A stretch of DNA of 64,000 nt from positions 62,001 through 126,000 of the IMG/VR virus record IMGVR_UViG_3300028393_000019, one strand, 5' to 3'. Below, piece by piece: positions 6,576 to 38,136 of the stretch. The notes under the pieces were generated by a model. It had not been told where the DNA came from. It did not search any database and worked only from the letters and a program-made list of their open reading frames with translations. Each line of letters opens with the position of its first letter. Positions within the stretch are counted from its first letter, which is position 1. Position numbers and translations under genes: made by a program.

Positions 6576-7778
6576 ATGACTACTATAGATAAACTATTAA
6601 TAAAGATTATTAATCAGCCTGATGACTATGCTAAAAATCTTTTTGCGAAACGAGATTTTGACGTACTCAACAATCTCTATGGTTCTATCTTGGCCAATTT
6701 TTTCATTACAGAAAATCAAAGTAGACTATTGATAAAAATCCTCAAAGAAAATCAGAAAAAATTATCAGATTTTTCACAAGAACTTACTTCAGCTCTGGAC
6801 GCACCTGAGTGGTCAAGAAGCTTTAGACACATAGAGCAGGTTAAAAAACTCTATATTGAAAAAACTCCAGAAGACGTGTTGGCATTGACCATAGAGTTTA
6901 CCTTTAGTTCGCAAATTCGTAAACTGTTAGTTGAATTGAACAAGCATTGTGAAAATTTAGAACCAGGGCCAACTGGCAAAAAATACTATGCAGAGCTAAC
7001 TGAAAAGAATATTGTCAAACTGGTCGAGGCATTATCGCCATTGAACTTTGAAATTGACTCTACAGTCAAAACTCATTACGATACCATAAAATCTTGGTCT
7101 CTGCAGGATATCTCCGATCAGTTTCTAATTGCCAACATGCCTGGTAACAACTTTCAAAAACACATTTCTGCGGACTTGGGAATAGAAACAGCAATCGATC
7201 AAAACATTATTGTCGACCGTGGCATGCGCTATCAATACAGTCTGGAACATCCCAGAAAATTCGGTGAAAATCTCGTAGAAATCATCGCCAATAGAACCAA
7301 GTCGAGAATATGGTTGGGTAAAGAAACTTATGACTTGGCTTCAATAATCAGTGCATTAATAGATTTAAAGAGACTACCGTTGTTAGTAGTGTTCGACTCT
7401 CTAGCCGCTGGCAAATATGTAGAAAATTTGGAAATTTTGTCAGATGCACTAGAAAAAAATGGAATTTTTGACAACATTGGAGTTTACTTTAGATTGCCCA
7501 ACGACGAGGTTGGCACAACATTTAATCAGTTGATAAAGGAAAAATCCTATAATGCTAATCTTGATTCAAGTACAAAAGTGGCAGTTGTCATGAGTGGAAA
7601 ATTACCGAAATTTTTCCTTAAAAATATGTGGCAACCTATGAGTGTGCTGACATTGGATACCAAAATGGGCCTACGTCATGGCAAGATTGCAGTATACTCT
7701 AACTGTTGTGATCTTGTAGTTGAATGGTCAGACAAGGAAGTTTTATTTGAAAATAGGATAGTTGGCAAATGGCAGTAA
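6576..7778 (+). CDS. Hypothetical protein
   Basis: About 400-aa ORF; start moved to the first ATG after the promoter. Confidence 0.8.
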   Translation: MTTIDKLLIKIINQPDDYAKNLFAKRDFDVLNNLYGSILANFFITENQSRLLIKILKENQKKLSDFSQELTSALDAPEWSRSFRHIEQVKKLYIEKTPEDVLALTIEFTFSSQIRKLLVELNKHCENLEPGPTGKKYYAELTEKNIVKLVEALSPLNFEIDSTVKTHYDTIKSWSLQDISDQFLIANMPGNNFQKHISADLGIETAIDQNIIVDRGMRYQYSLEHPRKFGENLVEIIANRTKSRIWLGKETYDLASIISALIDLKRLPLLVVFDSLAAGKYVENLEILSDALEKNGIFDNIGVYFRLPNDEVGTTFNQLIKEKSYNANLDSSTKVAVVMSGKLPKFFLKNMWQPMSVLTLDTKMGLRHGKIAVYSNCCDLVVEWSDKEVLFENRIVGKWQ

Positions 7779-9235
7779 GACTGATAATCAAAGATGAAGT
7801 CAACATAAAAATTGAGAATCTGCCATTGGATGTTCGCAAGAAATTAGCCAACACCTTTAAGTATGAGATTCCATATGCTCGCTATCACCCGGCATTCAAA
7901 TTGGGGCGATGGGATGGCATGGTCAGTTTATTCGGACTTGGCGGCAACGGTTATCTAAGTCAGTTGGAACAGATATTAGGAATCCTGGCCAAACAGGGAA
8001 TTACCATCGAAGATGTTGAAGATCTACGTACTACACCGCAGTTTAAATTTGAACCTGTGACAGAAACATACTGGGCAGATCAAGGCAAAGTGTGGCCCAA
8101 AGGACATCAACAAGAAGGCCAGCCTATCATGTTGCGTGATTATCAAGTCGAAGCTGTTAATACATTTTTAACCAATCCTCAAGCTCTGCAAGAGATAGCA
8201 ACAGGTGCTGGCAAGACCATTACTACAGCAACTTTGAGTCAATTGTGCGAACAGTTAGGGCGTACAATTACCATTGTTCCCAACAAGAGTCTGGTAGAAC
8301 AGACAGAAGAAGACTTTATTGCTGTGGGGCTAGATGTAGGTGTTTACTATGGTGATCGAAAAGATCTCAACAAGACACATACCATCTGCACATGGCAAAG
8401 TCTGAACATATTAGACAAGAAAAGTAAAAATCATGAGCATGAAATTGTAACACTGACACAATTTCTCGATGGTGTTAAATGTGTAATTGTTGACGAAGTA
8501 CACATGGCCAAGGCCGAAGTTCTTAAAAATTTACTCACTCAAAATCTGTGTAATGCGCCAATTCGCTGGGGATTAACAGGAACTGTTCCCAAAGAAAAAT
8601 TTGAAAGCGAACAAATATTTGCTTCAATAGGTCCAGTGGTAGGCGGCATCAAAGCACACGAATTGCAGGAAATGGGAGTACTATCAAACTGCCATGTTAA
8701 TGTGGTGCAGATGATTGATCTACCTGAATTTAACGGTTATGCAGAAGAATTAAAATATCTTGTCACTGACGATGACAGGATGATCTATATCTCAAAGTTA
8801 ATTAAAAAAATATCTCAAACAGGCAACACTCTAGTTCTAGTTAATAGAATTGATTCAGGCAAATTTATAATAAACGAGTTACCAGATGCAGTATTTGTAT
8901 CAGGTGCAGTGAAAACAAAAGATCGCAAAGAGGAATATGATGAAATTAAAACCAGTGATAACAAAATTATTGTTGCGACCTATGGCGTCGCGGCTGTTGG
9001 TATTAATATTCCTAGGATCTTTAACATGGTACTGCTTGAGCCTGGTAAGTCGTTTGTTAGAGTTATTCAAAGTATAGGCAGAGGCATCCGTAAGGCAGAA
9101 GACAAAGATTTCGTACAGATATGGGACATAACGTCCACATGCAAGTACGCAAAAAGACACCTTACCGAGCGTAAGAAATTTTACAAGGAGGCCAAATACC
9201 CGTTCAATATTGATAAGGTTGATTGGTCTAAATAA
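7769..9235 (+). CDS. uvsW: SF2 DNA helicase (UvsW-like)
   Basis: LRDYQ, ATGAGKT, VDEVH, GLTGT and QSIGRGIR motifs. Confidence 0.92.
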   Translation: MAVRLIIKDEVNIKIENLPLDVRKKLANTFKYEIPYARYHPAFKLGRWDGMVSLFGLGGNGYLSQLEQILGILAKQGITIEDVEDLRTTPQFKFEPVTETYWADQGKVWPKGHQQEGQPIMLRDYQVEAVNTFLTNPQALQEIATGAGKTITTATLSQLCEQLGRTITIVPNKSLVEQTEEDFIAVGLDVGVYYGDRKDLNKTHTICTWQSLNILDKKSKNHEHEIVTLTQFLDGVKCVIVDEVHMAKAEVLKNLLTQNLCNAPIRWGLTGTVPKEKFESEQIFASIGPVVGGIKAHELQEMGVLSNCHVNVVQMIDLPEFNGYAEELKYLVTDDDRMIYISKLIKKISQTGNTLVLVNRIDSGKFIINELPDAVFVSGAVKTKDRKEEYDEIKTSDNKIIVATYGVAAVGINIPRIFNMVLLEPGKSFVRVIQSIGRGIRKAEDKDFVQIWDITSTCKYAKRHLTERKKFYKEAKYPFNIDKVDWSK

Positions 9236-9240: not shown

Positions 9241-9747
9241 ATGCAGATTTTAACACTAGATAATGAGATGTTCTCATTGAACAATTTACCAGAGGAAGTG
9301 GACGAAAATACTAGATTTGCAGTATTGGACAACAGTGATCCTAAAGAACCAGATTTTATGTTTATGCCTTTGATCTTTTTAGAAAGCTTCAACAGTCCAG
9401 CAATGGTACTGAGAATCGGTGATGATGAAGTGGCTATGCCTATCGATTGGAGCATAGCAGTAGGTGATAGTCAAAGCGGATGCGACATTGAGATCCTGCC
9501 ATTGACAAGTCTAAACGATAGAGGATTTGAAGCATTAATTTTTAATCCGCTGAGTAGCTTTAGGGTTGAGTTTAAGAAAATACAAATTGTTAATTTCTAT
9601 AACGATGTCAAATGGTATTTCCCCAAGATGAAGAATAGCCAGCTGTTAGCAACTCCTATCAAATCCGGACACAAGCCGGACTGTGCATATTTTGTCAAAG
9701 AAATTTCAAGACAAAGTGAAATCATACTGTTAGATAAAATACTATGA
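9241..9747 (+). CDS. Hypothetical beta-rich protein (possible Hint-like fold)
   Basis: 168-aa ORF; fold is inference only. Confidence 0.75.
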   Translation: MQILTLDNEMFSLNNLPEEVDENTRFAVLDNSDPKEPDFMFMPLIFLESFNSPAMVLRIGDDEVAMPIDWSIAVGDSQSGCDIEILPLTSLNDRGFEALIFNPLSSFRVEFKKIQIVNFYNDVKWYFPKMKNSQLLATPIKSGHKPDCAYFVKEISRQSEIILLDKIL

Positions 9748-10367
9748 CCCTCAAAATTGCTTATTTTCAGCCCATAACATTGGCAATAGATCAAGTGCCT
9801 CCGATAGAGTTCAGCAAGATATTCAACCTAGCTGAAATGTTACATCAACATCCTGAGCTAAATGACAGTACCAATCCCATGCTCAGTATACGTGGAGGGC
9901 AACAGGTACAAGTGTATCCCAATCAGTTGGGCATGGATGTTGATTGGTTAGTCAATTGGCTTGAAAATATCTGCAAAGGCTACATGGAACTGATCAGCCA
10001 GCAAAGCGGTACTGAAGAATTAAAACTATGTAGACCAAAGATTGTCAGCGCCTGGACCATTAGGCAATATGCCGGTGATTACCAAGAAATGCACAGTCAT
10101 CCAGGCGGGCATCTAAGTGGAAATATCTATATCAGCGCACCTGAACTTGCGGAAGGTAGCTTGCCCAGTGACAGTCAAATATTGTTCCGACTACCACATG
10201 GAAAAGATGTAAGTAAATTTATTATGAACGACACATGGAAATATACCCCCACTCCGGGCACTGTTATTCTGTTTCCCAGTTACTTGCCTCACACAGTGTA
10301 TCCCTGGAAAGGTACTGGACATAGAACTGTGTTGGCGTTTGACGCTATCTTATTGCCCAAGGATTAA
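9744..10367 (+). CDS. 2OG-Fe(II) oxygenase superfamily protein
   Basis: HSHPG...SGNIY and FPSYLPHTVYP...R pattern of the DSBH fold. Confidence 0.8.
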   Translation: MTLKIAYFQPITLAIDQVPPIEFSKIFNLAEMLHQHPELNDSTNPMLSIRGGQQVQVYPNQLGMDVDWLVNWLENICKGYMELISQQSGTEELKLCRPKIVSAWTIRQYAGDYQEMHSHPGGHLSGNIYISAPELAEGSLPSDSQILFRLPHGKDVSKFIMNDTWKYTPTPGTVILFPSYLPHTVYPWKGTGHRTVLAFDAILLPKD

Positions 10368-10369: not shown

Positions 10370-10663
10370 ATGGGCAATCTCAAACCCGGCGTACCGCTAA
10401 TATACGAAAGCCCAGATGGCGGCAACACCATATATGGTAGAGAACCTGGACAAGATCCTAGAGAAAGGAAACTGATTGGATACAAATATCCGGATCCTCG
10501 AACTAGCGACGGCAGACCGTTGCATGAACACATTATAGAAGATAAAATGTGGGGAGAAATACGTCTGATGGCTAAAACCAATTCCACTTTACAAAAGGCT
10601 TTAGATCGTGCTATAATGATATACAAGTTGAGCAAAGATGAACAAACATATAGACCTTTTTAA
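10370..10663 (+). CDS. Hypothetical protein
   Basis: 97-aa ORF with YESPDGGNTIYGR motif. Confidence 0.8.
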   Translation: MGNLKPGVPLIYESPDGGNTIYGREPGQDPRERKLIGYKYPDPRTSDGRPLHEHIIEDKMWGEIRLMAKTNSTLQKALDRAIMIYKLSKDEQTYRPF

Positions 10664-11120
10664 AGAAATTATACCACTGGTTGACCTAGGCGCCAGATCT
10701 GCTTGGTCCGAAGCCACAGAGGATGAGCGTAAAGAAATCAAAGGCGACATGTACAATCTCAATCGCTATATCAGCAGTGTAAAAACCAACAACCGTGAGA
10801 TACAAGAGCACTTTATTCTAACAGTAAACGAGTACTACAACAAACATTGGTCTGTACTACAACAGCATCCTAATCTGTTATGGCAACTGCTGTGTATGTG
10901 CAGTTATGATGGCAAAACCAAATTCTTTCATGAGTGGATACCTAATAAAAAACGTGACAGCAAAGGCGGCAAGCGAGCAAGATTCCTTGAAGAATTAATG
11001 CCTGACAAAAAAATTGATGAGATTGAATTGCTGGCTGAAATGTCTACTGATAAAGAAATTAAGGATCTAGCCCGAAGTCACGGGATGGATGAAGCTACTA
11101 TTGCCAAGAAACTTAAATGA
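10638..11120 (+). CDS. Possible clamp-loader small subunit (gp62-like)
   Basis: Size, LNRYIS...VNE...HEWI pattern and replication context; weak similarity by eye. Confidence 0.45.
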   Translation: MNKHIDLFKEIIPLVDLGARSAWSEATEDERKEIKGDMYNLNRYISSVKTNNREIQEHFILTVNEYYNKHWSVLQQHPNLLWQLLCMCSYDGKTKFFHEWIPNKKRDSKGGKRARFLEELMPDKKIDEIELLAEMSTDKEIKDLARSHGMDEATIAKKLK

Positions 11121-11809
11121 TGGCATTGATCAACCAACCGTTCATCTGTCAACACTGTAACAAAGGGTTCATGCAGGAGAAAACTCTATTTGTTCACGTG
11201 TGCGAACAGAAGCGTAGATATCTGGCAAGGACAGAAAAACATGTAATGTTAGGATATGACACTTATAATCGTTTTTACAAAATGAGTCAAAACTTCAAAG
11301 GCGACAAAACATACGATGATTTTGCCCGTAGCCCTTACTATAATGCTTTTGTCAAGTTCGGCAGCTTTGTCAGCAATGTTAATCCTTTATATCCTGATAA
11401 GTTTATCAACTATGTAGTTACCAGTGGAGTTAAACTAGATCATTGGTGCAGGGACGAACTGTATGACGACTATGTTGTTCACTTGATCAAAAATGAACCG
11501 GTTGAAGTTGCACTGGAACGCAGTGTGAGTCATATGCTGTCGTGGGCCAATGATAATAACTCGCAATTCAATCATTATTTTTTATATGTTAGTCTAAGTC
11601 GTGCTTGCTATGACATTCGTGACGGAAAGATAAGTCCTTGGTTGGTTTTAAATTGTACCAGTGGCAAGGACATGCTGAAAAAATTTAACGATGAACAATT
11701 GATGGCAGTCAGTGCAGTAATGGATGTTCCTTTCTGGTTGAATAAATTTAAGAAGCTATCTGCAGATTCCGAACTGGTGAAGCAAGTAGTTAAGGAGTCC
11801 AGTATATGA
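11117..11809 (+). CDS. Hypothetical protein with N-terminal C2H2-like zinc finger
   Basis: FICQHCNKGFMQEKTLFVHVC. Confidence 0.75.
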   Translation: MMALINQPFICQHCNKGFMQEKTLFVHVCEQKRRYLARTEKHVMLGYDTYNRFYKMSQNFKGDKTYDDFARSPYYNAFVKFGSFVSNVNPLYPDKFINYVVTSGVKLDHWCRDELYDDYVVHLIKNEPVEVALERSVSHMLSWANDNNSQFNHYFLYVSLSRACYDIRDGKISPWLVLNCTSGKDMLKKFNDEQLMAVSAVMDVPFWLNKFKKLSADSELVKQVVKESSI

Positions 11810-11985
11810 AGACAAGAAAGTTAAAAGATGGAACTGAAGTAAAAGAGTTAGTATTACCAGTTACTCTAACTGTTTATACACGCTGTCCTGAAAAATATAA
11901 ATTAGTCGACATGGAAACTGGCGAAGAATATATTGGATACCCTACCATCGGAAATTCTAGCTGGAAGAAAATTAAAAATGCCTGA
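11806..11985 (+). CDS. Small hypothetical protein (59 aa, not in the ORF track)
   Basis: AAGGAG RBS; MKTRKLKDGTEVKEL...; overlaps both neighbours. Confidence 0.75.
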   Translation: MKTRKLKDGTEVKELVLPVTLTVYTRCPEKYKLVDMETGEEYIGYPTIGNSSWKKIKNA

Positions 11986-12559
11986 TATTGATATTGATTT
12001 TGCAGATAGAACACAAGCATTGAGTGTGTTAAAACATGTTGACGCCAGTTTGGATGGTACTTTTAAAAAGCACAATACCGGTGTATACTGTACTAGTATT
12101 CCGTACAATCCTGTCAGCGGTATAAGCACTATTGACTACAAGACAGCCGAAGAACGAGGATATTTTAAATTAGATTTTTTGAATGTCAGCGTGTATGAAG
12201 GCGTCAAAGACAAACAACACTTGACAAAATTAATGGAGACAGAACCACCATGGGAACTACTGGAACAGGACGAATTTACGAATCTGCTATTTCACGTGAA
12301 TGGGCACGGGCGAGTCTTGAGGACGCTGAAACCGAGAGATATCGAACAGCTCGCGGCTTGCCTGGCAATAATACGCCCCGCGAAAAAACACTTGCTAGAC
12401 AAATCGTGGAACGACATAATGAAAGAAGTATGGGTGAAACCAACGACTGACGAGTATTATTTTAAGAAGGCACATGCTGTTGCATATGCACATGTGATTG
12501 TGGTGCAGATGAATTTAATCTGCGAACAATTATCGGACTTTTCGAACAAGCTGGACTGA
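11978..12559 (+). CDS. Minimal DNA polymerase III alpha (DnaE)-like catalytic core, 193 aa
   Basis: MPDIDIDF, KHNTGV, GYFKLDFLN, LAIIRPA and YYFKKAHAVAYA match DnaE palm/finger motifs in order. Confidence 0.85.
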   Translation: MPDIDIDFADRTQALSVLKHVDASLDGTFKKHNTGVYCTSIPYNPVSGISTIDYKTAEERGYFKLDFLNVSVYEGVKDKQHLTKLMETEPPWELLEQDEFTNLLFHVNGHGRVLRTLKPRDIEQLAACLAIIRPAKKHLLDKSWNDIMKEVWVKPTTDEYYFKKAHAVAYAHVIVVQMNLICEQLSDFSNKLD

Positions 12560-12904
12560 TTTACGTTTAACACGTTTCATAGTCAAGTTCATTAGGTTAA
12601 CTACAGGTCCTAGAATAATACGTGTATCTTTGCTGTTGAATGTTTTGATTGCATAAGCATACGGTCCTATTTGATCTCGACAAAATATGCTGATAGGAAA
12701 CTGGCGATTTGACTCCCACCACCAAACTTCTCCTATTTCTAAGAATGCTGTCTTTTCTTCAGGAGTTCTTAAGGCGTTGAGATCATAGAAGCTAGTAACA
12801 TACTGATCTTGATTGATTACGATACCCACGTATTCGTTATCACCGTAGTTTAATACACTGATGAAGGGTAGATTTTGTTGTATGTCGTCTCTTAGTTTTG
12901 CCAT
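12530..12904 (-). CDS. Hypothetical protein
   Basis: Single minus-strand ORF; start moved to ATG 12904 (MAKLRDDIQQNLPFIS). Confidence 0.75.
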   Translation of the reverse strand: MAKLRDDIQQNLPFISVLNYGDNEYVGIVINQDQYVTSFYDLNALRTPEEKTAFLEIGEVWWWESNRQFPISIFCRDQIGPYAYAIKTFNSKDTRIILGPVVNLMNLTMKRVKRKSVQLVRKVR

Positions 12905-12931
12905 AAATACTACTAATAAAGGTTCCTGGTA

Positions 12932-14035
12932 ATGCAAAAAGTTCAAAGTTATTTATATCCTAATAGAGTAGTACTATTGGCTGATTTGGCAGGATTCACT
13001 GTGGAGAACAAGGTCGTGTACGCAAAAACAATTAAAATTTATCAAGGTGTTGACAATGTCATAGAATTTGACATACAAAACGTTGACCAGAAACGTTTGG
13101 ATTTATCAACTCTGTCAAATCTCAAAGTCAACATCATGGATGCTGGAGGCAAGGCACTGAATAATAGTCCTTACCCTATGACTTTAGTAACCAGTGCCAC
13201 TGCTACTGGCGCAACTGTCAATGCTACAACTGGCCAAGCGTCAACAACAACAATCACTGTACCTACTGCAAATATTTCAGGTAATGGATTTGCTGTGGGC
13301 TACACTATCACTGGTACTGGGATCAAAGGAACTGTTACAGTAAGTGCAGTAAACACAGACATTGACTCAGCTACCACTACAATATCCGTAACCTTTGCCA
13401 AGCAAACTGTGTTAAGAGCAACTGGAGTTGTTATAGCCAACACAATCATGGGATTGGCCAAGATAATTATTCCAATAGCAGATATTAGTACACTCAGCGA
13501 TCAGTTTTTAACTTACAGTGCTACCGCTGTAAACACATCGGGCAACACAGTTATGTTGTACAACGACAGCCAATTTGGCGGAAGTGGTACTATGCAATTT
13601 ATTACCAATGCTTCACCTAAAACTCGTGCTACAGTCATACACGATGAGTTTGCCAGTGAAATAAATTTTATGGGCAATGTGATAACTCATACTTCGGCTA
13701 TCCCTTGCAAATTCTACGAAGCTCAATCAACTGCCAGTATGAATTTTCAAGTTACTTTGAATGCATTTATCGGCACTGTGTATGTTGAAGGAACCGAGGA
13801 TATGACCATTTCAGTGAGCAGTTGGCTCAATACTCCAAAATTGCAGTCATTTACCTGCACTACACCTACTAGCCAAACAATACCATTTAGTCTTGTTCCG
13901 GTTCTCAACCCGGTCACAGGCAAGAACTACAGCTACATGCGAGTTAGTTGGTTCTATCCAGATGTTTGGTCCTATGGCAGTCAACAAAATGCTGCCGCGG
14001 TCTACGGATCAATTACCAAAGTCGTTGCTTCCTAA
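12932..14035 (+). CDS. Probable virion structural protein
   Basis: CATAAATA at 12902; Thr/Val-rich beta composition. Confidence 0.65.
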   Translation: MQKVQSYLYPNRVVLLADLAGFTVENKVVYAKTIKIYQGVDNVIEFDIQNVDQKRLDLSTLSNLKVNIMDAGGKALNNSPYPMTLVTSATATGATVNATTGQASTTTITVPTANISGNGFAVGYTITGTGIKGTVTVSAVNTDIDSATTTISVTFAKQTVLRATGVVIANTIMGLAKIIIPIADISTLSDQFLTYSATAVNTSGNTVMLYNDSQFGGSGTMQFITNASPKTRATVIHDEFASEINFMGNVITHTSAIPCKFYEAQSTASMNFQVTLNAFIGTVYVEGTEDMTISVSSWLNTPKLQSFTCTTPTSQTIPFSLVPVLNPVTGKNYSYMRVSWFYPDVWSYGSQQNAAAVYGSITKVVAS

Positions 14036-14058: not shown

Positions 14059-15051
14059 ATGAGCCTAATCGCGGATACACTACTACAATACCTTCCGGGC
14101 AAGCGTAAACATACTCCAAGTGGTTGGATATCGTTCAATGCTGTCTGTTGCGATGACCAGCGGCAACGTGGCGGATTCATAGTAAATGCAGGTGATGCTG
14201 TCAGCTATCATTGTTTCAATTGTGGATTCAAATGCAGTTGGCAACCTGGTAGGCACATCAGCAAAAACATGAACAAGTTCATGCGAGATTTGAATATTCC
14301 CGACGGTACTATTAGCCAACTGAGATTAGAAGCACTTAGATTAGATAACAACAATACCGCAGAAATTCGTAGTATAATTCCTAAATTCGATGTTAGGGCA
14401 CTGCCACTGGATGCTATTAGTTTTGAAGAGCTAACTACATTTTTAAAACTGCCAGATGGAGATTATGCAGTTCCGACTAAGTTTGCCGAGTCGGTTGCCT
14501 ACTTAGTTGAGAGAAAAATTGATCCTTTTGATTATCCGTTTTACTGGACTAACAAGGTGGGATTTAACAATAGAATTATTATTCCGTTTTTATACAAAGG
14601 TGAGATTGTAGGCTGGACTGCCCGTGCTATCAACGATGCCAAACCTAAATATCTAAGCGAACAACAACCTGGATACGTTTTTAATTTAGACAGTCAACAA
14701 GACGATAGGGAATTCGTGATTGTTAGCGAAGGCCCATTTGATGCGCTAAGTATTGATGGGTGTGCGTTGCTAGGAGCGGAGATAAAAGACAGTCAAAACT
14801 GGTTATTAAAGCAGTTAGGAAAAGAAATTGTACTGGTACCAGATAAGGATGCCGCTGGCAAAGCGACCTTAGAACAAGCATTGGAATTTGGGTGGGGTGT
14901 GAGCATGCCTGACTGGCCCGAAGGTATCAAAGACATCAACGATGCTGTGGTCAAACTAGGCAAGTTAGCGACACTTTGGTTGATAGTATCAGCTAAAGAA
15001 TCAAACAATCTTAAAATACAATTGAGGGCAAAAAAATGGTTCAACGAATAA
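14059..15051 (+). CDS. DNA primase (T4 gp61-like)
   Basis: Zn motif C..C and HCFNCG; TOPRIM VSEGPFDA, LVPDKD and KDINDA; start moved to 14059. Confidence 0.9.
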   Translation: MSLIADTLLQYLPGKRKHTPSGWISFNAVCCDDQRQRGGFIVNAGDAVSYHCFNCGFKCSWQPGRHISKNMNKFMRDLNIPDGTISQLRLEALRLDNNNTAEIRSIIPKFDVRALPLDAISFEELTTFLKLPDGDYAVPTKFAESVAYLVERKIDPFDYPFYWTNKVGFNNRIIIPFLYKGEIVGWTARAINDAKPKYLSEQQPGYVFNLDSQQDDREFVIVSEGPFDALSIDGCALLGAEIKDSQNWLLKQLGKEIVLVPDKDAAGKATLEQALEFGWGVSMPDWPEGIKDINDAVVKLGKLATLWLIVSAKESNNLKIQLRAKKWFNE

Positions 15052-15152
15052 TTGATTTTATTTTATCTCCTTGGCGAATGTGGCAAGAGCATCGAGCATT
15101 CAAAAAACGACTGGAAGAATTGCGGAAACGTGATCCTTTTATCTACAAATGA
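15036..15152 (+). CDS. Small protein (38 aa, ...KRLEELRKRDPFIYK)
   Basis: Fills the gap and overlaps the primase stop and next ATG (ATGA). Confidence 0.7.
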   Translation: MVQRIIDFILSPWRMWQEHRAFKKRLEELRKRDPFIYK

Positions 15153-16621
15153 TCAGTTGGGGGATTTCGGCAAATAGCCACGATGCGGCACTGGCAGTAT
15201 TTGCTGACGAAAAACTGGTATTTGCCAGCCACAGTGAAAGATACAGCGGCATAAAAAATGACAGAGATTTATGTAAAGAATTGGTAGCGGATGCCAAACG
15301 GTTTGGGTATCCAGAAAAAGTTTATTGGTATGAACGGCCTTTTCTCAAGTCATTGAGACAATTATATGCCGGGCAAGGCTGGAAAGGCCGAGACAATGAT
15401 ATTGATATTTACATGGCACGTTATGAAATTGATGCGCCAGTTGAGTATGTTGATCACCATCTTAGTCATGCCGCAGGCGGATACTATACCAGCGGATTTG
15501 ACAATGCGTGTGTGATAGTTGTAGATGCTATCGGAGAATTTGAAACATTTACTATTTGGGAAGGCAACGGCACTAAACTTAAAAAACGATTTAGTAAAAG
15601 TTATCCATACAGCATGGGATTATTTTACAGTGCTATGACACAACGAGTAGGGTTGAAGCACAATGAAGACGAATATATTTTAATGGGCATGGCTGCATAC
15701 GGCGATCCTAAAAAACATATACAGCGAATTTATGATGATTTTTTTAAAGGGCCGTATGACAGTTTTAAAATGAAAAGAAATCTTCATAGAGGGTGTATGG
15801 ACTGGGCTCCTGATTTGATTATAAAAGACAGTTTTGACATTGCGGCCGCAGTTCAGTGTATATATGAAGAATGGCTTGATGATATATTGGTCAAGGCAAG
15901 ACTGTTGGTTGACAGTGACAATTTGGTGTTAATGGGCGGTTGTGCATTGAACTGTAGTGCTAATAGACTGACCGGAGACTATTACAGTAAAACATGGATC
16001 ATGCCTAATCCAGGAGATGCTGGCAGTTCAATAGGTGCAGTGTTGGCCAAGAATCCCAAGTGGCGTATGACTCAGGATGCATTTACTCCATTCTTGGGAT
16101 ATGATATGGGCAGTCGTACTAACAACAAAGAAATAGTTGACTATCTAGTAGACAACAAGATTTGCGGATTGGCCCGTGGACGAGCAGAATTTGGTCCACG
16201 AGCATTGGGCAATAGAAGTCTGTTAGCGGATCCCCGCGGTGAAGATATAAAGGATCGAGTAAATGCAATCAAACAACGACAAGAATTTAGACCTTTTGCT
16301 CCGGCAATACTTGAAGAGCATGTGGACATGTACTTTGATATGCCTAGCGGTTGGAATACTAGTAGGTATATGCAAGTGGTCGCTCGTTGCAGGCATCCTG
16401 GCCACTATCCTGCCATTGTGCATCGTGATGGAACTTCACGTGTACAAACTGTACCAAACGATGGAAGCCCGTTTAGACAACTCTTAGAAGAGTGGTATGC
16501 TCGAACTGGATGCCCAATGTTACTCAACACCAGTTTAAATATCAAAGGCAAACCCATGGTGAATGATCACGCAGACTCAAGAAACTTTCAACGCCATTAC
16601 GGTGTTAAAGTTTTTAATTAA
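15149..16621 (+). CDS. Carbamoyltransferase, NodU/CmcH/TobZ family
   Basis: HDAA, HHLSHA, DAIGE, GGCALNC, GDAG, EFGPRALGNRS, RPFAP and LNTSLN motifs. Confidence 0.92.
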   Translation: MISWGISANSHDAALAVFADEKLVFASHSERYSGIKNDRDLCKELVADAKRFGYPEKVYWYERPFLKSLRQLYAGQGWKGRDNDIDIYMARYEIDAPVEYVDHHLSHAAGGYYTSGFDNACVIVVDAIGEFETFTIWEGNGTKLKKRFSKSYPYSMGLFYSAMTQRVGLKHNEDEYILMGMAAYGDPKKHIQRIYDDFFKGPYDSFKMKRNLHRGCMDWAPDLIIKDSFDIAAAVQCIYEEWLDDILVKARLLVDSDNLVLMGGCALNCSANRLTGDYYSKTWIMPNPGDAGSSIGAVLAKNPKWRMTQDAFTPFLGYDMGSRTNNKEIVDYLVDNKICGLARGRAEFGPRALGNRSLLADPRGEDIKDRVNAIKQRQEFRPFAPAILEEHVDMYFDMPSGWNTSRYMQVVARCRHPGHYPAIVHRDGTSRVQTVPNDGSPFRQLLEEWYARTGCPMLLNTSLNIKGKPMVNDHADSRNFQRHYGVKVFN

Positions 16622-16636: not shown

Positions 16637-18070
16637 ATGGCACAAAATACAGATTACAGTTACGATATACAAAAATTATACTTGGAAATGATGCTGGCAG
16701 ACGCCGCAACATTTGTTCGTTGTCAAAGCATTTTTGATGCAAGTTTGTTTGATCGCAAGCTTCAAGCACCTGCAGAGTTTATCAACAAATATGTTGAAGA
16801 TCACAATGTTATGCCCACGCAAGATATTGTAAATGCCGCAACCAGCAGTGATTTTAAGGTCAGTCAAGATCTACGTGAAGAACATTTTGATTGGTTGTTG
16901 AGCGACTTTGAAACATTTATCCGTCACAAAGGATTAGAAAAGGCCATTCTAGAGTCAGCTGACCTGTTGGAAAAAGGTGAATATGGTCCCGTGGAAGAAA
17001 TGATCAAAAAAGCAGTGCAAGTGGGTCTGACCAAGGATCTAGGCACTGACTATTTCTTGGATCCACGTGCTCGACTGATGCGAATCAAAGACAATAATGG
17101 TCAAGTATCTACTGGTTGGAAAGCCATGGATGACAAATTGTTTGGTGGTATGAATCGCGGTGAGTTGAATATATTTGCTGGTGGTTCAGGTGCTGGAAAA
17201 TCACTGTTTTTGGCCAATTTAGGTATCAACTGGGCCTTGGCTGGATTGAATGTGGTATACCTAACATTGGAACTTAGTGAAGAATTAGTGTCCATGCGTA
17301 TGGATGCCATGTTGACTGGTATGGCCACTAAAGAGATTTTCAAGAACCTAGATGACGTTGAAATGAAAATCAAAGTGATTGGTAAAAAGTCCGGATCTTA
17401 CCAGGTAAAATACATGCCCAGTGGTAAAACTGCCAACGATATTCGTGCTTACTTGAAAGAGTATGAAATCAAAATGGGTCGTAAAGTTGACGTGCTGTTG
17501 GTAGATTACTTGGACTTGCTAATGCCGATTAGCAAGAAGATATCACCAGCAGACTTGTTTATTAAAGACAAGTATGTCAGTGAAGAATTACGCAATTTAG
17601 CGGTGGAAAAGGGCTGTGTGTTTGTAACAGCGGCACAGTTGAATCGCGGAGCAGTTGAGGAAGTTGAATTTGATCATAGTCATATCTCGGGCGGTTTGAG
17701 TAAGATTCAGACAGCAGATAATGTGTTTGGTATCTTTACAAGTCGTGCAATGCGTGAGCGTGGTCGCTATCAAATCCAACTGATGAAAACACGCAGTTCA
17801 AGCGGTGTTGGTATGAAGATTGATCTAGAGTTCAATATAGACAGTTTGCGTATCAGTGACCTAAGCGAGGAAGAAAGCTACGGTAACAACAATAGTCAGT
17901 CAGCTGGCAGCACCTTGTTGAACAGTATCAAACAACGACAGACAGTCAACCCATCTACTGGCGAAATTACAGACCCGATGGCAGGCGCCGCAGTGCCCAA
18001 AGTTCGTGCGCAGGTAGAGTCCAGCAAGCTGAGAGAACTACTTAATAATCTGCCTGGCGATGATATCTAG
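16637..18070 (+). CDS. Replicative DnaB-like helicase (T4 gp41-like)
   Basis: GGSGAGKS, LTLELSE, VDYLDL, TAAQLNR and KTR motifs. Confidence 0.92.
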   Translation: MAQNTDYSYDIQKLYLEMMLADAATFVRCQSIFDASLFDRKLQAPAEFINKYVEDHNVMPTQDIVNAATSSDFKVSQDLREEHFDWLLSDFETFIRHKGLEKAILESADLLEKGEYGPVEEMIKKAVQVGLTKDLGTDYFLDPRARLMRIKDNNGQVSTGWKAMDDKLFGGMNRGELNIFAGGSGAGKSLFLANLGINWALAGLNVVYLTLELSEELVSMRMDAMLTGMATKEIFKNLDDVEMKIKVIGKKSGSYQVKYMPSGKTANDIRAYLKEYEIKMGRKVDVLLVDYLDLLMPISKKISPADLFIKDKYVSEELRNLAVEKGCVFVTAAQLNRGAVEEVEFDHSHISGGLSKIQTADNVFGIFTSRAMRERGRYQIQLMKTRSSSGVGMKIDLEFNIDSLRISDLSEEESYGNNNSQSAGSTLLNSIKQRQTVNPSTGEITDPMAGAAVPKVRAQVESSKLRELLNNLPGDDI

Positions 18071-18602: not shown

Positions 18603-19619
18603 ATGAGCAAAACCGTACACAGTGTAAAACTACAAGCATACGCCAGCGTTGATTTAGACCGAATAAGTTATAGCGGTGGTGATATTGTCTACGACAAAAC
18701 TAATGGCACACTACGGGTCATGGACGGCGAAACGCCCGGTGGCGGCAAGTTAGCTACACAATTATGGGTGCAAAACTCTGCAGGCACAATCACTGCTAAT
18801 CTAAAAGGCGACATATATACAGCCGGTGGTTTGCGTGTATTGGACAACGGTACAACCCTAGCCAATCCTGCGTTTTTCGGTGATGTTTATGCTAGTAACG
18901 GCACTAGTAAGATATTAGATAATGGTACTGACGGCACTAACGCATTATTTACAGGATCACTAACTGGTAATGTTACAGGAAATTTAACTGGCAATGTTAC
19001 AGGAAATTTAACAGGTAATGTTACTGGTAATGTTACTGGAAATTTAACAGGTAATGTCACTGGTAATGCAGACACTGCCACTAAACTAGCGGCTACTAAA
19101 AACATTAATAATGTAGCGTTTGACGGATCGGCTAACATAACACTTAGCACACTAGTCAATGGTACTAAAACAATAACTTTAAATTCATCTGGTAACTTAG
19201 TAATACCAGGTGCAAGTGGCGGCGGTCTGATATCGTCAACTGGTTATAATTATCTTAGTACTGTAGGTTCACTTATTATCGATGGCGATCAAGTTGCCTT
19301 AGACTATCGTGGTAACAACAATCTATTTGTTGATGAATTTGGTATTGAATTCTATACTAACTCCACTGGAACTAGCGGCTTCAACGCCAGTATATCAGCT
19401 GATAACCATTGGGCATTTGCGCCGGACGGTACAACTTATCTTCCTGGTAATATTACCATGCCTAGCGGCACTGTTAATGCCAGTGCAGTAACAACGACCA
19501 ATGATGTGACAGTTGGCGGCAACGCTGTGATAAGTACTGCGCCAACATTGACAACACACGCAACGAATAAAAAATATGTAGACAAAAAAGCAACAGCCAT
19601 GTCCATTGCTTTGAGTTAA
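18603..19619 (+). CDS. Tail fibre-like protein with GNVTGNLT repeats
   Basis: TAAATA at 18573; repeat tract; C-terminal TAMSIALS. Confidence 0.75.
   Translation: MSKTVHSVKLQAYASVDLDRISYSGGDIVYDKTNGTLRVMDGETPGGGKLATQLWVQNSAGTITANLKGDIYTAGGLRVLDNGTTLANPAFFGDVYASNGTSKILDNGTDGTNALFTGSLTGNVTGNLTGNVTGNLTGNVTGNVTGNLTGNVTGNADTATKLAATKNINNVAFDGSANITLSTLVNGTKTITLNSSGNLVIPGASGGGLISSTGYNYLSTVGSLIIDGDQVALDYRGNNNLFVDEFGIEFYTNSTGTSGFNASISADNHWAFAPDGTTYLPGNITMPSGTVNASAVTTTNDVTVGGNAVISTAPTLTTHATNKKYVDKKATAMSIALS
18960..19070 (+). repeat. 12-nt-period coding repeat (GNVT/GNLT)
   Basis: Tandem GGtAATgTtACt-like units read directly. Confidence 0.9.
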
Positions 19620-19637: not shown

Positions 19638-22600
19638 ATGTCAAAGAAACAAATAACTAATTATAAGTTTTTTCCAGGAGCGATTCCTCCTGCTTATAAT
19701 CAATATCCAAAAACAGTAGCACTACTAACAGCCAATAGAGCTTTCCTTGTTGCAGAAACCGATGCGTATATTCGTGCCCAAATACTTGCTAATGCATCAA
19801 ACGTTTCAAGTCCCTATTATAACTATGCTTACGATGCAACTAGATCTACTAAATGTAAAAGAGATATCGGTTATAATTTAGATTCGATGGTGTATGATTT
19901 AACTCAAGGCGGTAATAGTTTATCCTATCAGATGGGTGCAAACTATTATGTCAACGGTGTTATACAGATTCTCACACCAGCCGTAGAAGTTGATGTTAAA
20001 ACTTGGTTACGTGGCAGAATTACCAATTATATCTTAACTAATACAACTTATACTAGATTAAACTCAACAGTTACACAAACTACTATTACTGGTAATGCAG
20101 GTGAGTCGACTGGCATTGCACAAACTTCTGTTTTGTTCAATTACATTATCAATGCTATCAATATTGGTCTAAGTTCGCTTCCAACCGTTATAGCACCTGA
20201 TAGTCAAAATGCCGGATTACTACCACAGACAGTTGCACTTCTAGAAGCAAACAAAAGATTTATTCAAGAAGAAGTTATTGCTTTTATTGCCTATAATGTA
20301 GCAAACAATATTGCACCATTTGCATACTACACCTACAATAAAGAAAAATGTTATAGAGACGTTAGTTATGTTTTGGAAGGATACATTAGTGATTTAAAGC
20401 ACGGTGGCAATAGACAAACATATTTTAATGCTAGTAAATATTTTGATAATGGTTATCCACAAGTAGACGGCGATAGGACTCCGGAAGTTGCCGCACATAC
20501 ATTTATTCGAGATTTAGTTTCAAACTATATTTTGACTAATGTTACGGCTACTGCTCGTAACACTAGCGTAAGTCAAGTTATCGAACAAGCGTACACTCCG
20601 GAATTAGGAGGTTCTGCACAATTTGTTGCTCTTACTAATATTGTTATCACTGTTATTACAAACGGTCTATCTAGTCTACCAACTAAAATTTCAAATCGTG
20701 GCTATGTTAAATTTCCTGGATTTTACAAACTTAAAGATTTCTTATTGATTACCAACACTAGTAGAAATACAATTCTTTATAATTTTAGTGATTCAGATAA
20801 TGCGGCAGAAGTAACATATAGTAGCGGATACGACAGTGATTTTGGCGGCGCCAGTTACGGATTTGAACAAGTTACTACTATAACTTTTAATGTCAGTACT
20901 ACTGGTATGATGGTCACTGACAATATACAAATATTTGTTGAAGGTAAAGAACAAGCAGTACGTATGAATAGTATCGGTACAGATGCTATGGAACGTATGA
21001 AGGTTGGTATTCCACAAAGTATGTTGGACGCTGACTTTGAGTACGGACTACAGCCAACCAAGTGGCAAACAATTAGTATGATGCGTAACTATCCAAGTGT
21101 ATATGAAATACCAGGTAGTGATAAAGCAGTTGTTAGTGTGTACACTGATGCATCAGCTGGTACTAGTTTTACAGGTGCCAGCCAACTGACTGTAACCACC
21201 GTAGCGGCTCATAGTTTTAGTGTTGGTGACGTGTTTACAATTAAAGCGTTAGCTAGTAGTGTCTCGGGTTTTAGTCGTGCAGAAGGTACATTCATTGTTG
21301 CTAGTATAGTATCATCTAATGTATTCACGTACTATGCAAAAAGTAAAGTTGGTTCTGTTAATCCGACACTATTAAGTTCTTCGTATACACAACTACGTGC
21401 GGCCGGATTTTATACAGGAGCAAGTGTTGGTAATCCAGCGTTTAACGTTTATTCTAATGGTCAAAGCGGTACTGTCACAACATATTTAAATTCTGCTAGT
21501 GGTAGTACATTTATTGGATTTAGCGGTACAGCACCAATAGCAGGTGCTCCTATCACCGGTACAGGTATTACTGCCGGTACACAGATCACATCAGTGTTTG
21601 GGGCAGGTGGTGCAGTAGCTAGTACAAAATTAACAACTAGTGCCGCAATTAATGATACACAATTAATCGTGGCTAGCACAACAGGAATTATTCCAGGTTT
21701 AGTGTTTGATCGAGGCGATGGCACTGTAGTTCAAGTTACTACTATCAACGGCAATACTGTTGGACTAAGCGGTCCATTAACTAGTACCATATTAGGAACT
21801 AATCAAACATATAGTGGACTATCACAAAGTGCTACAAGTGGAACAGGATCGGGCGCATTATTCAATGTTTCGAGATTGAATACTGTATATGCCGCGGCAG
21901 CGGGAGCAAGTGCTGGCGGCGGTTATATTGCTAATGATACTATTACTATTTTAGGAACAAGTGTGGGAGGTTCAACCACAGCAAATGATGTGACCATAAC
22001 AGTAACTGGTGCTAGTCCAATTAATGCTGTGGATACTTTTGACAATGCCACACTTGTTCCCGGCAGCCTGTATCTGGGCACTGAAGTAAACATAGTCACA
22101 ACTGGCGGTACTGGTACAGGACTCACTGTGGATATTACCGGCATTGGGGTTGGAGGAACAGTAACAGGCGTAGCTATCAATAATGCTGGTCAGGGATATA
22201 CAGTCGGCAACACCATTACCATCAGCGGTGGCGGCAATGCTGATGCAACTATCCAAGTATTAACTGTGCAAGCTGGCGGATTAGTTACAGCATTCTCAGT
22301 TTCAGGAACTCCAGTAACTCCCCCAACAAAGAATTTTATCAGCGCAATTGGACTGACTGACGTTACTACACAAGCTATTGCCAGTGCAAGCACGTTAAAC
22401 TATACTAGTATTGCAACTATTGAAATACAATTTAGTAGTCCTCATGGATTTGTTCCAGGTGATAGTATCACAACTACTATTAGTAGTACGGGTTCAAATG
22501 CTCAATTATCAGCGGGCGCATTTTATGTTGAGCAAGTGCCAAGTACAACTACACTACGATATACAGCAAGAGCTCCAGGAACTATTGCCAATACACTAGT

Positions 22601-26588: not shown

Positions 26589-27527
26589 ATGGCGAATACG
26601 CAGATAAAACTAAGAAGAGACACATCCAGTAACTGGAAAACAGTTAATCCTGTACTGGGTGCAGGTGAGCCCGGTCTTGAAACCGATACTCTATTGTTCA
26701 AGTTTGGCGACGGAACCAGTAACTACAACAGTTTGCTTTATCCAACCCTATATGCTACCCCTACCGCAGCCAGTGCCTTAACTGGAACAACTTTGCCATT
26801 GTCCTTGGTCAACAGCAGTTTAACATCAGTGGGTACTTTGACGGGATTAACAGTCAATGGCAATGTTACTGTAAACAGTCCATATGTGATTACTGGTACT
26901 GTGACCTATGCTCAAACAGCTGGAACGGCCAGTAGTGCGGCAACTGCAACCAGTGCAACCAGTGCAGGCACAGCGACCACTATAACTGGCCCTGTAGGCG
27001 GCTCAAACAATGCAATTACCTATTTAAAATCCAACGGAGCAATAGGATTTGTAACAGACCCATCTACCGGTTCGGCAGGAGTATTCTTAACATGGAACGG
27101 ATCAGGATTCACTTGGGCATCTGCACCGTCAGCTTCAGCCAGTACACTGTCGGGCGATACCTTAGCATCAGGGATATTGAACAGTAGCCTAACCAAAGTT
27201 GGAACTATTGCCACTGGCGTATGGAACGGTACAGCTATTCCTGTAGCTTATGGCGGAACTGGATCAACATCCGCCGCGGCAGCTTTGATAGCACTGGGTG
27301 CCGCACCGGCTGCAGGATCTAGTAGCATAACCACAGTGGGTGCTTTGACGTCATTGACTATTAGTGGCACAGCTGATGCTACCACAGCAAATAATGTACA
27401 GTTTGGATCAATTATAACAGCAGGTGGCATTAATGTGGCAAAAAACGCCTATATTGGCGGGAACCTGTTTGTAGGCGGCGTAAACCTTAAAGCATTGGCC
27501 TTAGTCATGGCCGCAGCCTTGGGCTAA
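26589..27527 (+). CDS. Tail fibre-like protein with Mtd_N-type N-terminus
   Basis: IKLRRDTSSNWKTVNPVLGAGEPGLETDT..KFGDG; C-terminal VMAAALG; CATAAATA upstream. Confidence 0.75.
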   Translation: MANTQIKLRRDTSSNWKTVNPVLGAGEPGLETDTLLFKFGDGTSNYNSLLYPTLYATPTAASALTGTTLPLSLVNSSLTSVGTLTGLTVNGNVTVNSPYVITGTVTYAQTAGTASSAATATSATSAGTATTITGPVGGSNNAITYLKSNGAIGFVTDPSTGSAGVFLTWNGSGFTWASAPSASASTLSGDTLASGILNSSLTKVGTIATGVWNGTAIPVAYGGTGSTSAAAALIALGAAPAAGSSSITTVGALTSLTISGTADATTANNVQFGSIITAGGINVAKNAYIGGNLFVGGVNLKALALVMAAALG

Positions 27528-37342: not shown

Positions 37343-37552
37343 CTAAAACTCAAAAAATCTGTGGGGCCACTGTAGGTACATCCAATTGAGATATCTACGA
37401 GCAGATTCCGCCACATATACTATGTGAAATTCATATTCCTGGCTTTGAAACTGCCAACATTCCTTGCGTAGATCCAACTGATGCTGTTGACAGTATGCTG
37501 TTATCGCCTGTAGTTCAGGGCTGTCTTGGGGAATTGTGATCAAGATGCGCAT
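37343..37552 (-). CDS. Small hypothetical protein
   Basis: 69-aa ORF convergent with the late block. Confidence 0.6.
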   Translation of the reverse strand: MRILITIPQDSPELQAITAYCQQHQLDLRKECWQFQSQEYEFHIVYVAESARRYLNWMYLQWPHRFFEF

Positions 37553-37629
37553 CTAGTATTTAGACCCTGAAAGGGTTCAAGCGGCAAAAAATTTCTAGCG
37601 TAAAAAAAATTGGCCAAGTACTTACGCAA

Positions 37630-37854: not shown

Positions 37855-37856
37855 GG

Positions 37857-38135: not shown

Positions 38136-38136
38136 A

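What the first reader, a model, noticed from the sequence alone, without database searches (positions are those of the whole stretch)
11978..12559. 193-aa minimal C-family (DnaE) polymerase keeping all three catalytic aspartates
Seen: motifs in DnaE order, namely PDIDIDF, KHNTGV, GYFKLDFLN, LKPRDIEQLAACLAIIRPA and YYFKKAHAVAYA. Known: these correspond to E. coli DnaE PDFDVDF (two catalytic Asp), KHAGGV, KFDFLG (third Asp), ALFRPG and GFNKSHSAAYA. Only about 24 residues separate PDIDIDF from KH here, so the thumb is deleted, and the PHP, most fingers, clamp-binding and OB domains are absent. The ORF is clean, translationally coupled and lies in the replication block near the primase. Inference: not a pseudogene but a stand-alone nucleotidyltransferase (primer extension, repair, template-independent or protein-primed synthesis), or one subunit of a split polymerase completed by neighbours such as 11117..11809.
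Basis: partly seen in the sequence, partly recalled or inferred. Interest (0 to 1): 0.8.

Follow-up and report, generated by a model that had tools for sequence, protein, structure and literature searches.

The report
Half of a split mini DnaE
This 193-residue gene is the catalytic-aspartate half of a two-gene, stripped-down relative of the bacterial replicative polymerase DnaE; the family is widespread in T4-like jumbo phages, was described by comparative genomics in 2021 and has never been tested at the bench.

Summary
ORF 11978..12559 (+) is a clean 193-aa gene. Its motifs match E. coli DnaE in order: 399-406, 528-641 and 754-767. All three catalytic Asp are present, and the thumb and a ~90-residue finger segment are deleted. 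Profile search against the PDB, an AlphaFold model (pLDDT 95) and Foldseek all point only to C-family polymerases.

The gene is not a pseudogene. At least 8000 sequence clusters have the same length, 79 of 80 relatives start at M-PDIDIDF, and dN/dS is about 0.13.

It is not a complete enzyme either. The NTP-binding GS-motif half of the palm (E. coli ~217-393) is a separate ~168-aa gene in relatives, lying tens to hundreds of kb away beside the clamp-loader gene. One natural protein, P0226, fuses both halves. The adjacent ORFs, including 11117..11809, are unrelated to DnaE.

I did not find the partner in the window or in 162 kb of the 265.7-kb source contig. The other 104 kb could not be read.

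Iyer et al. 2021 (PMC7824862) already described this split minimal Pol III alpha of group 2.2 jumbo phages, which also carry a family B polymerase. The finding is therefore correct but already known. Its biochemical role is still untested.

The parts
11978..12559 (+). C-terminal unit of the split minimal Pol III alpha (DnaE-like). It holds the DxD strand (D3, D5), KH motif (K31 H32), third-Asp strand (K64, D66), RP motif (R133 P134) and KKxH motif (K163/K164, H166).
11806..11985 (+). 59-aa upstream ORF whose stop overlaps the C-unit start by 8 nt. It is specific to this window and its close relatives and is not part of the conserved module.
12530..12946 (-). Convergent small ORF (phrog_11637; likely ATG start at 12904). 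It overlaps the C-unit 3' end by 30 nt and is conserved next to the C-unit in Phosso, RaK2, Paride and the fused-gene contig L187. Function unknown.
11117..11809 (+). Conserved syntenic neighbour (phrog_11058), with sub-threshold Pfam hits to C2H2 zinc-finger models at its N-terminus. Not DnaE-related.
10638..11120 (+). Conserved syntenic neighbour (phrog_11758). Function unknown, no DnaE similarity.
9241..9747 (+). Conserved syntenic neighbour (phrog_11279). Function unknown.
7769..9235 (+). UvsW-like helicase, the upstream boundary of the conserved module.
14059..15051 (+). DnaG/gp61-type primase (Toprim).
16637..18070 (+). DnaB/gp41-type replicative helicase.

Best explanation
The ORF encodes the C-terminal half of a two-polypeptide, minimal C-family (Pol III alpha/DnaE-like) nucleotidyltransferase typical of T4-like-core 'group 2.2' jumbo phages.

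This half supplies the beta-strands that carry the three metal-binding aspartates (D3, D5, D66). It also supplies the retained finger helices, with R133-P134 and K163/K164-H166, which in DnaE line the primer-template and incoming-nucleotide site.

The other half is a separately encoded ~168-aa protein carrying the GVGRGSS (GS) triphosphate-binding loop. It ends where E. coli DnaE reaches residue ~393, and this ORF begins at ~399. The two must therefore associate non-covalently to rebuild one Pol-beta-like palm.

The enzyme has no PHP, thumb, clamp-binding, OB or tau-binding parts. Relatives carry a family B replicase. I therefore infer that it is an auxiliary DNA-synthesising enzyme of the replication/repair apparatus and not the main replicase.

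Shown here: homology, residue conservation, selection, the split architecture and the existence of a natural fusion. Inferred: heterodimer formation, catalysis and the biological role.
For: Homology:
- Colinear BLASTP segments.
- phrog_11778 at 2.8e-67 and phrog_405 at 6.5e-9.
- A profile of 110 sequences against the PDB returns only DnaE chains in its top 9, E about 2e-5.
- AlphaFold2 model with pLDDT 95 and pTM 0.87. Its top 16 PDB and top 25 BFVD Foldseek hits are all DnaE-type polymerases.

Conservation and selection:
- K64, D66 and P134 are invariant. D3, D5, D7, H32, G35, R133, K136, K163 and H166 are at least 90% conserved across 110 diverse members.
- All of these are 68/68 in the close clade, where median dN/dS is 0.13 over 284 pairs.
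- Three SNPs in an independent 2024 lake population are all synonymous.

Architecture:
- 79 of 80 IMG/VR relatives start with ATG at MPDIDIDF, with an in-frame stop 0-41 codons upstream.
- At least 8000 clusters have lengths of 186-202 aa.

Partner:
- The natural fusion P0226 (375 aa) joins a GS-motif N part to the C-unit in the C-unit's own gene context.
- The N part is a separate gene in the same cultured phage groups: 92 records against 87 for the C-unit.
- The N-unit profile aligns to Ec DnaE 217-393 (hhalign probability 95%, E 3.5e-8).
- All 176 N-unit reading frames examined in IMG/VR loci end at ...EF[LM][KR], and none has a C-unit within 4 kb.
- Both units lie on the same contig in two relatives, IMGVR_UViG_3300024503_000015 and IMGVR_UViG_3300008110_000034.

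Literature: the same split minimal Pol III alpha is described for group 2.2 jumbo phages (PMC7824862).
Against: - The partner gene was not found in the window (best HMM E=2.3). It was also not found in positions 62,001-223,976 of the 265,680-bp source contig. The other 39% could not be read, so its presence in this genome is only inferred from relatives.
- No biochemical data exist for any member.
- The finger segment that in E. coli holds R709/R710 falls in the deleted stretch, and from recalled structures those residues contact the incoming dNTP. With no thumb either, processive templated synthesis is doubtful.
- Foldseek TM-scores normalised to the query are only 0.4-0.5, and Pfam thresholds are not reached for this half.
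Confidence: 0.75

Rival explanations
1. The split N+C enzyme is catalytically active but is not a templated DNA polymerase. It could be a template-independent terminal transferase, a primer or short-oligonucleotide maker, or a nucleotide-modifying or signal-making transferase used in DNA modification or anti-defence.
For: - It lacks the thumb and the R709/R710 finger segment.
- Relatives already have a family B replicase.
- In this window the module also carries a 2OG-Fe(II) oxygenase and a carbamoyltransferase, which hints at nucleotide or DNA modification.
Against: - The retained finger helices and the RP and KKxH motifs are those of the DnaE nucleic-acid/dNTP site and are nearly invariant.
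- The gene sits in a UvsW-primase-DnaB module, and its partner sits next to the clamp loader.
- The oxygenase and carbamoyltransferase are insertions specific to this window and are not conserved with the C-unit.
Confidence: 0.15
2. The 193-aa protein works alone as a minimal nucleotidyltransferase.
For: - All three Asp are kept.
- The protein is predicted to fold confidently on its own.
- No partner was found in 162 kb of its own contig.
Against: - The ORF starts exactly at the DxD strand, so the GS-loop/NTP-binding part of every Pol-beta-like palm is missing.
- That part exists as a strictly co-occurring separate gene in relatives and is fused in P0226.
Confidence: 0.05
3. The adjacent conserved ORFs (10638..11120, 11117..11809) supply the missing DnaE parts.
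For: These ORFs are syntenic with the C-unit in Phosso, RaK2 and Paride. They are tightly packed or overlapping.
Against: - They have no DnaE, PHP or GS-motif similarity in Pfam, PHROGs, a phmmer search with full-length E. coli DnaE or the N-unit HMMs.
- The 230-aa ORF belongs to a phage-only family whose only Pfam similarity is a sub-threshold C2H2 zinc-finger match.
- The true palm complement is identified elsewhere.
- They could still be accessory factors. This was not tested.
Confidence: 0.04
4. It is a decayed dnaE fragment, an assembly or frameshift artefact, or a non-catalytic remnant that only binds replisome partners.
For: It is only about a sixth of the length of DnaE, and Pfam is below threshold.
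Against: - Thousands of same-length homologues.
- dN/dS of 0.13 and invariant catalytic residues.
- A conserved start.
- Independent assemblies match with no indels or joints.
Confidence: 0.01

Closest known systems
Split minimal DNA polymerase III alpha of group 2.2 jumbo phages, C-terminal unit (Iyer et al. 2021, Viruses 13:63, PMC7824862; PHROG phrog_11778; e.g. RaK2 ORF124, Phosso gp437, Paride_0017)
   Same: - Full-length family match at 37-54% identity to cultured members.
- Same ~190-aa ORF starting at the DxD strand.
- Same UvsW ... C-unit - convergent ORF ... primase - DnaB synteny.
   Different: - It comes from an uncultured freshwater-lake jumbo phage (contig of at least 265.7 kb).
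- The module carries extra inserted genes: a 2OG-Fe(II) oxygenase, a carbamoyltransferase and a 59-aa ORF.
- The partner N-unit has not yet been located in this genome.
Bacterial Pol III alpha / DnaE (PDB 2HNH, 2HPI, 3E0D, 5LEW; Pfam PF07733 + PF17657)
   Same: - Pol-beta-like palm strands with DxD and the third Asp.
- KH, K-x-D, RP and (N/K)KxH motifs in the same order.
- The only significant structural and profile matches are to DnaE.
   Different: - No PHP domain.
- The GS-loop half of the palm is on another polypeptide.
- The thumb (~80 aa) and a ~90-aa finger segment are deleted.
- Nothing beyond Ec ~780 is present, so there is no clamp-binding, OB or tau-binding part.
- 193 aa against 1160 aa.
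Full-length DnaE-like polymerases of phages (phrog_405; e.g. Pbunavirus, Bacillus phage G, actinophage DnaE)
   Same: Homologous catalytic core.
   Different: Those are single polypeptides of 500-1300 aa that serve as the phage replicase. This one is split, minimal, and accompanied by a family B polymerase in relatives.

Membership tests
C-family DNA polymerase (Pol III alpha / DnaE) | Pol-beta-like palm strands carrying two Asp (DxD) plus a third Asp | tested here: met
   D3/D5 = Ec D401/D403 and D66 = Ec D555. They are at least 90% conserved to invariant in 110 sequences and 68/68 in the close clade.
C-family DNA polymerase (Pol III alpha / DnaE) | GS-motif (GxGRGS) NTP-binding half of the palm in the same polypeptide | tested here: not met
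   The ORF starts at the DxD strand. The motif is on a separate ~168-aa protein in relatives and is absent from the window.
C-family DNA polymerase (Pol III alpha / DnaE) | N-terminal PHP domain | tested here: not met
   No Pfam PHP hit, and there is no sequence upstream of the DxD.
C-family DNA polymerase (Pol III alpha / DnaE) | Thumb domain between the DxD strand and the KH strand | tested here: not met
   The spacing is 24 residues against 104 in E. coli. The thumb boundaries 433-510 are recalled from Lamers et al. 2006.
C-family DNA polymerase (Pol III alpha / DnaE) | Complete fingers, clamp-binding motif, OB fold and tau-binding C-terminus | tested here: not met
   Only Ec ~561-641 and ~740-770 equivalents are retained, and the protein ends near Ec ~780.
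C-family DNA polymerase (Pol III alpha / DnaE) | Curated Pfam threshold for PF07733/PF17657 | tested here: not met
   PF17657 scores 14 bits against a cut-off of 22, and there is no PF07733 hit for this half. The N-units do carry precomputed PF07733 hits.
C-family DNA polymerase (Pol III alpha / DnaE) | DNA polymerase activity | not testable with these tools
   No biochemical report was found.
Jumbo-phage split minimal Pol III alpha, C-terminal unit (phrog_11778; Iyer et al. 2021) | Full-length similarity to the family | tested here: met
   phrog_11778 E=2.8e-67, residues 3-184 on profile positions 8-194 of 197. There are 87 cultured jumbo-phage records.
Jumbo-phage split minimal Pol III alpha, C-terminal unit (phrog_11778; Iyer et al. 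2021) | Stand-alone ~190-aa ORF that begins at the DxD strand | tested here: met
Jumbo-phage split minimal Pol III alpha, C-terminal unit (phrog_11778; Iyer et al. 2021) | Host genome is a T4-like-core jumbo phage with a conserved replication-module context | tested here: met
   - TerL, gp32-like SSB, UvsX, UvsY, UvsW, primase and DnaB are in the window.
- Synteny with Phosso, RaK2 and Paride.
- The source contig is 265,680 bp.
Jumbo-phage split minimal Pol III alpha, C-terminal unit (phrog_11778; Iyer et al. 2021) | Separate N-terminal (NTP-binding) unit encoded elsewhere in the same genome | tested here: inconclusive
   Present on the same contig in two relatives with 68-71% identical C-units. 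Not found in contig positions 62,001-223,976. The other 104 kb was not read.
Jumbo-phage split minimal Pol III alpha, C-terminal unit (phrog_11778; Iyer et al. 2021) | Accompanied by a family B DNA polymerase | tested here: inconclusive
   Reported for RaK2, MIJ3 and group 2.2 in general. None was seen in the 162 kb of this contig that was examined (gene and Pfam tables).

The most novel reading that the evidence does not exclude
The ~360-residue, two-gene enzyme is a working C-family nucleotidyltransferase with no thumb, no PHP domain and no R709/R710 finger segment. In thousands of freshwater, soil and enteric jumbo phages it would do a job that the family B replicase cannot. Candidates are primer hand-off or gap filling, template-independent synthesis, or handling of modified nucleotides. 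If so, it would be the smallest known C-family polymerase core and a possible model of that family's ancestral state.
Probability: 0.2. Interest if true: 0.75.

Novelty: already known. Interest (0 to 1): 0.3.

Why it matters
The C-family polymerases are the bacterial replicases, and their origin is unresolved. A naturally split, ~360-residue core that thousands of phages keep under strong selection is an attractive minimal system. It could show what the Pol-beta-like palm of DnaE needs in order to work.

The idea is already in print (Iyer et al. 2021). This window adds an uncultured lake member and some supporting evidence:
- a natural fusion of the two halves;
- uniform split points in several hundred loci;
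- a dN/dS estimate;
- a high-confidence model;
- fragments of the gene in lake RNA libraries.

The open question is biochemical.

Tried and rejected
- **No close DNA relatives.** Megablast of the region against cultured phages found nothing.
- **First structure job wasted.** Single-sequence AlphaFold gave pLDDT 35. Single-sequence phmmer against the PDB found nothing.
- **Partner search inside the window.** I tried phmmer with full-length E. coli DnaE, a GS-motif regex, phmmer with P0226 residues 1-189, and three N-unit HMMs of increasing depth. Nothing scored better than E=0.27, and the weak hits lacked the GS region.
- **Contig walking.** Exact-protein look-ups from position 126,000 to 223,976 found no N-unit, clamp loader or family B polymerase.
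- **Guessing the phage's own N-unit.** None sat on the 265,680-bp contig.
- **Neighbours as missing DnaE parts.** Rejected.
- **Paper supplements.** The 2021 paper's supplements, which might give accessions, are not held.
- **Not attempted, for lack of jobs.** A structure of the N+C pair or of the fusion P0226, and a Foldseek residue-level superposition of KHNTGV on KHAGGV.

Full report
**1. What is in the sequence**

Coordinates 11978..12559 (+) hold an uninterrupted ORF of 193 codons that begins M-PDIDIDF. A longer TTG-initiated version from 11933 is possible mechanically. However, 79 of 80 environmental relatives have an ATG immediately before PDIDIDF, with an in-frame stop 0-41 codons upstream, so 11978 is the real start. 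That ATG overlaps the TGA of a 59-aa upstream ORF by 8 nt. The 3' end overlaps a convergent ORF, 12530..12946 (-), by 30 nt.

**2. Homology to DnaE**

BLASTP against E. coli K-12 DnaE (fetched) gives three colinear segments:
- residues 1-8 with Ec 399-406;
- residues 36-135 with Ec 528-641;
- residues 160-173 with Ec 754-767.

In E. coli the motifs sit at PDFDVDF 400, KHAGGV 510, KFDFLG 553, LFRPG 637 and NKSHS 757. The DxD-to-KH spacing is 104 residues in E. coli and 24 here. This corresponds to loss of the thumb, whose boundaries 433-510 are recalled from Lamers et al. 2006. The RPG-to-NKSH spacing is 116 against 28, which removes a finger segment that includes R709/R710.

Statistical support:
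- Pfam alone is sub-threshold (PF17657, 14 bits against 22).
- PHROGs gives phrog_11778 'DNA polymerase' at 2.8e-67 over the whole protein, and the DnaE-like phrog_405 at 6.5e-9.
- A 110-sequence profile (A3) finds only DnaE chains among its nine significant PDB matches, from E. coli, Thermus and M. tuberculosis. E is about 2e-5 and the same three segments align.
- With that alignment AlphaFold2 gives pLDDT 95 and pTM 0.87.
- The top 16 PDB and top 25 BFVD Foldseek matches are all DnaE-type polymerases, at probability up to 1.0 and query-normalised TM 0.4-0.6.

**3. Not a relic**

The word-indexed search saturated at 8000 clusters, with the listed members all 186-202 aa long. The exhaustive search of 50%-identity representatives found 433 clusters at E<=1e-3.

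Across 110 diverse members K64, D66 and P134 are invariant. D3, D5, D7, H32, G35, R133, K136, K163 and H166 are at least 90% conserved. In 68 distinct close relatives all of these residues are 68/68. Median Nei-Gojobori dN/dS is 0.13 over 284 pairs with dS between 0.05 and 1.5.

Independent Logan assemblies reproduce the sequence with no indels or joints. A 2024 lake population differs in the gene by three substitutions, all synonymous. Contigs from two lake metatranscriptome libraries are 100% identical over 11760-12471 and 12350-12786. This is compatible with transcription but does not prove it, because DNA carry-over cannot be excluded.

**4. What kind of genome**

The window carries the following genes:
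- the C-terminal part of TerL, a gp32-like SSB, UvsX, UvsY and UvsW;
- this gene;
- a gp61/DnaG-type primase and a DnaB/gp41-type helicase;
- very large virion or fibre proteins.

tblastn finds the protein in 87 cultured phages, the listed ones jumbo myoviruses, at 37-54% identity. They include RaK2/K64-1/121Q-like phages, PA5oct-like phages, Atu_ph07, Phosso, SCTP-2 and XaC1.

The order UvsW - three unknown ORFs - this gene - convergent ORF - (virion protein) - primase - DnaB is shared with Phosso, RaK2 and Paride.

The window equals positions 62,001-126,000 of the 265,680-bp contig JGI 3300028393 Ga0304728_1000002. There were 0 mismatches over the 8 kb of overlap that was checked.

**5. The missing half**

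One representative, P0226 (375 aa), carries the C-unit at residues 190-371, preceded by a segment containing GVGRGSSSAS...IDP. This is the DnaE GS motif, GPGRGSGAGS...LDP in E. coli. The fused gene lies on a 2.4-kb contig. It is followed by a convergent ORF homologous to the window's 12530..12946 (-) ORF, so it sits in the C-unit's own context.

The N part occurs as a separate 165-180-aa gene in the same cultured phage groups: 92 records against 87 for the C-unit. Its distance from the C-unit is:
- about 30-34 kb in RaK2-like phages and the Vibrio phage;
- 43.8 kb in PA5oct-like phages;
- about 182 kb in Atu_ph07.

It always lies in the context N-unit - hyp - GroES-like - hyp - clamp loader.

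hhalign places the N-unit profile on Ec DnaE 217-393, at probability 95% and E 3.5e-8. It ends at ...EFLK, equivalent to ...ERFLN393, while this ORF starts at the equivalent of M399. The break is therefore at one precise point, just before the DxD strand.

The N-unit family is as large as the C-unit family: the word search again saturated at 8000, lengths are 165-172 aa, and the members carry precomputed PF07733 hits. All 176 N-unit reading frames examined in IMG/VR loci end at ...EF[LM][KR] with no C-unit within 4 kb.

Two long contigs carry both units. IMGVR_UViG_3300024503_000015 (270 kb) has a C-unit 71% identical to the window's. IMGVR_UViG_3300008110_000034 (181 kb) has one 68% identical.

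**6. The partner in this genome**

It is not in the window. HMMs built from 5, 9 and about 49 N-units give nothing better than E=0.27 against the six-frame translation.

Walking the source contig by exact-protein look-ups to position 223,976 found no N-unit, clamp loader or family B polymerase. Positions 1-62,000 and 223,977-265,680 remain unread. This is the main gap in the case.

**7. The neighbours**

The 230-aa ORF 11117..11809 (phrog_11058) belongs to a phage-only family. Its only Pfam similarity is a sub-threshold match to C2H2 zinc-finger models at the N-terminus. The 160-aa ORF (phrog_11758) and the 168-aa ORF (phrog_11279) have no known domains. None resembles DnaE or the N-unit.

They are conserved in synteny and could be accessory factors, but they do not supply the missing palm half. 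The 2OG-Fe(II) oxygenase, the 97-aa and 59-aa ORFs and the carbamoyltransferase are insertions specific to this lineage.

**8. Mechanism**

Shown:
- The protein is the aspartate-bearing, partly finger-bearing half of a DnaE-type palm.
- It is under strong purifying selection.
- In relatives the complementary GS-loop half is encoded separately, and the two are occasionally fused.

Inferred:
- The two proteins assemble into one Pol-beta-like active site that transfers nucleotides to a nucleic-acid 3' end.
- Relatives have a T4-type family B replicase, and this enzyme lacks thumb, clamp-binding and proofreading parts. It is therefore probably an auxiliary enzyme for short-patch synthesis, repair or primer handling.
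- A non-templated or otherwise unusual transferase activity is a serious alternative, because the R709/R710 finger segment is gone.

**9. Comparison with the literature**

Iyer, Anantharaman, Krishnan, Burroughs and Aravind (Viruses 2021, PMC7824862) describe this family in group 2.2 jumbo phages. [quoted passage not shown] They note that it accompanies a family B polymerase and propose it as a model of the ancestral enzyme.

GenBank, RefSeq, JGI and PHROGs already label members as DNA polymerase or DNA polymerase III alpha. I found no experimental study.

**10. Verdict**

The kind is already known, and this is one more uncultured member. Interest is modest for discovery, although the biochemical question remains open.

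Noticed in passing
window 9744..10367 and 15149..16621: A 2OG-Fe(II) oxygenase (PF13759) and a carbamoyltransferase (PF02543 + PF16861) are inserted inside the otherwise conserved UvsW-primase-DnaB replication module. They are absent at these positions in Phosso, RaK2 and Paride. They might be nucleotide or DNA modification enzymes.
   Followed up: partly
window 12530..12946 (-): A small convergent ORF (phrog_11637) overlaps the C-unit 3' end by 30 nt. It is conserved beside the C-unit in every relative examined, including the contig with the fused N+C gene. Function unknown; it may be functionally linked.
   Followed up: partly
window 19638..26555 and 27562..31881: Two giant paralogous virion or fibre proteins (2305 and 1439 aa, both phrog_5838), with fibre-like ORFs at 18603..19619 and 26589..27527.
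   Followed up: no
window 37343..57911 (-): A block of several dozen small minus-strand ORFs, mostly without family matches. The few with matches include a 5'-3' deoxyribonucleotidase (55126..55620) and an AAA+-like phrog_1250 protein (38695..39597).
   Followed up: no
window 60189..60701 and 60706..61317: Tandem paralogues with nearly identical N-terminal ~33 residues. The first carries a precomputed Peptidase_M23 hit. An AlgH-like DUF179 protein follows at 61336..61884.
   Followed up: no
window 6576..7778: A 400-aa ORF between UvsY and UvsW with no Pfam or PHROG match.
   Followed up: no
L191-L195 and L276-L281 (source contig Ga0304728_1000002, positions 126,000-223,976): The rest of the phage contig carries many host-like genes:
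- RNR, glutaredoxin and Fe-S assembly (NifU/IscA-like) genes;
- ribosomal protein S21 and an eIF-1a-like protein;
- HSP70, HSP20 and ClpS;
- heme oxygenase plus a ferredoxin-dependent bilin reductase;
- CsgF/CsgG/curlin-like proteins and a CHASE2-guanylate cyclase;
- a large radical-SAM/halogenase/aminotransferase cluster.
   Followed up: no
L187:1066-2193 (P0226): A natural single-polypeptide N+C version (375 aa) of the mini Pol III, seen on one 2.4-kb metagenome contig. Its closest N-unit relatives (L089, L090, ~60% identity) are separate genes. I cannot tell whether it is a secondary fusion or an unsplit ancestral form.
   Followed up: partly
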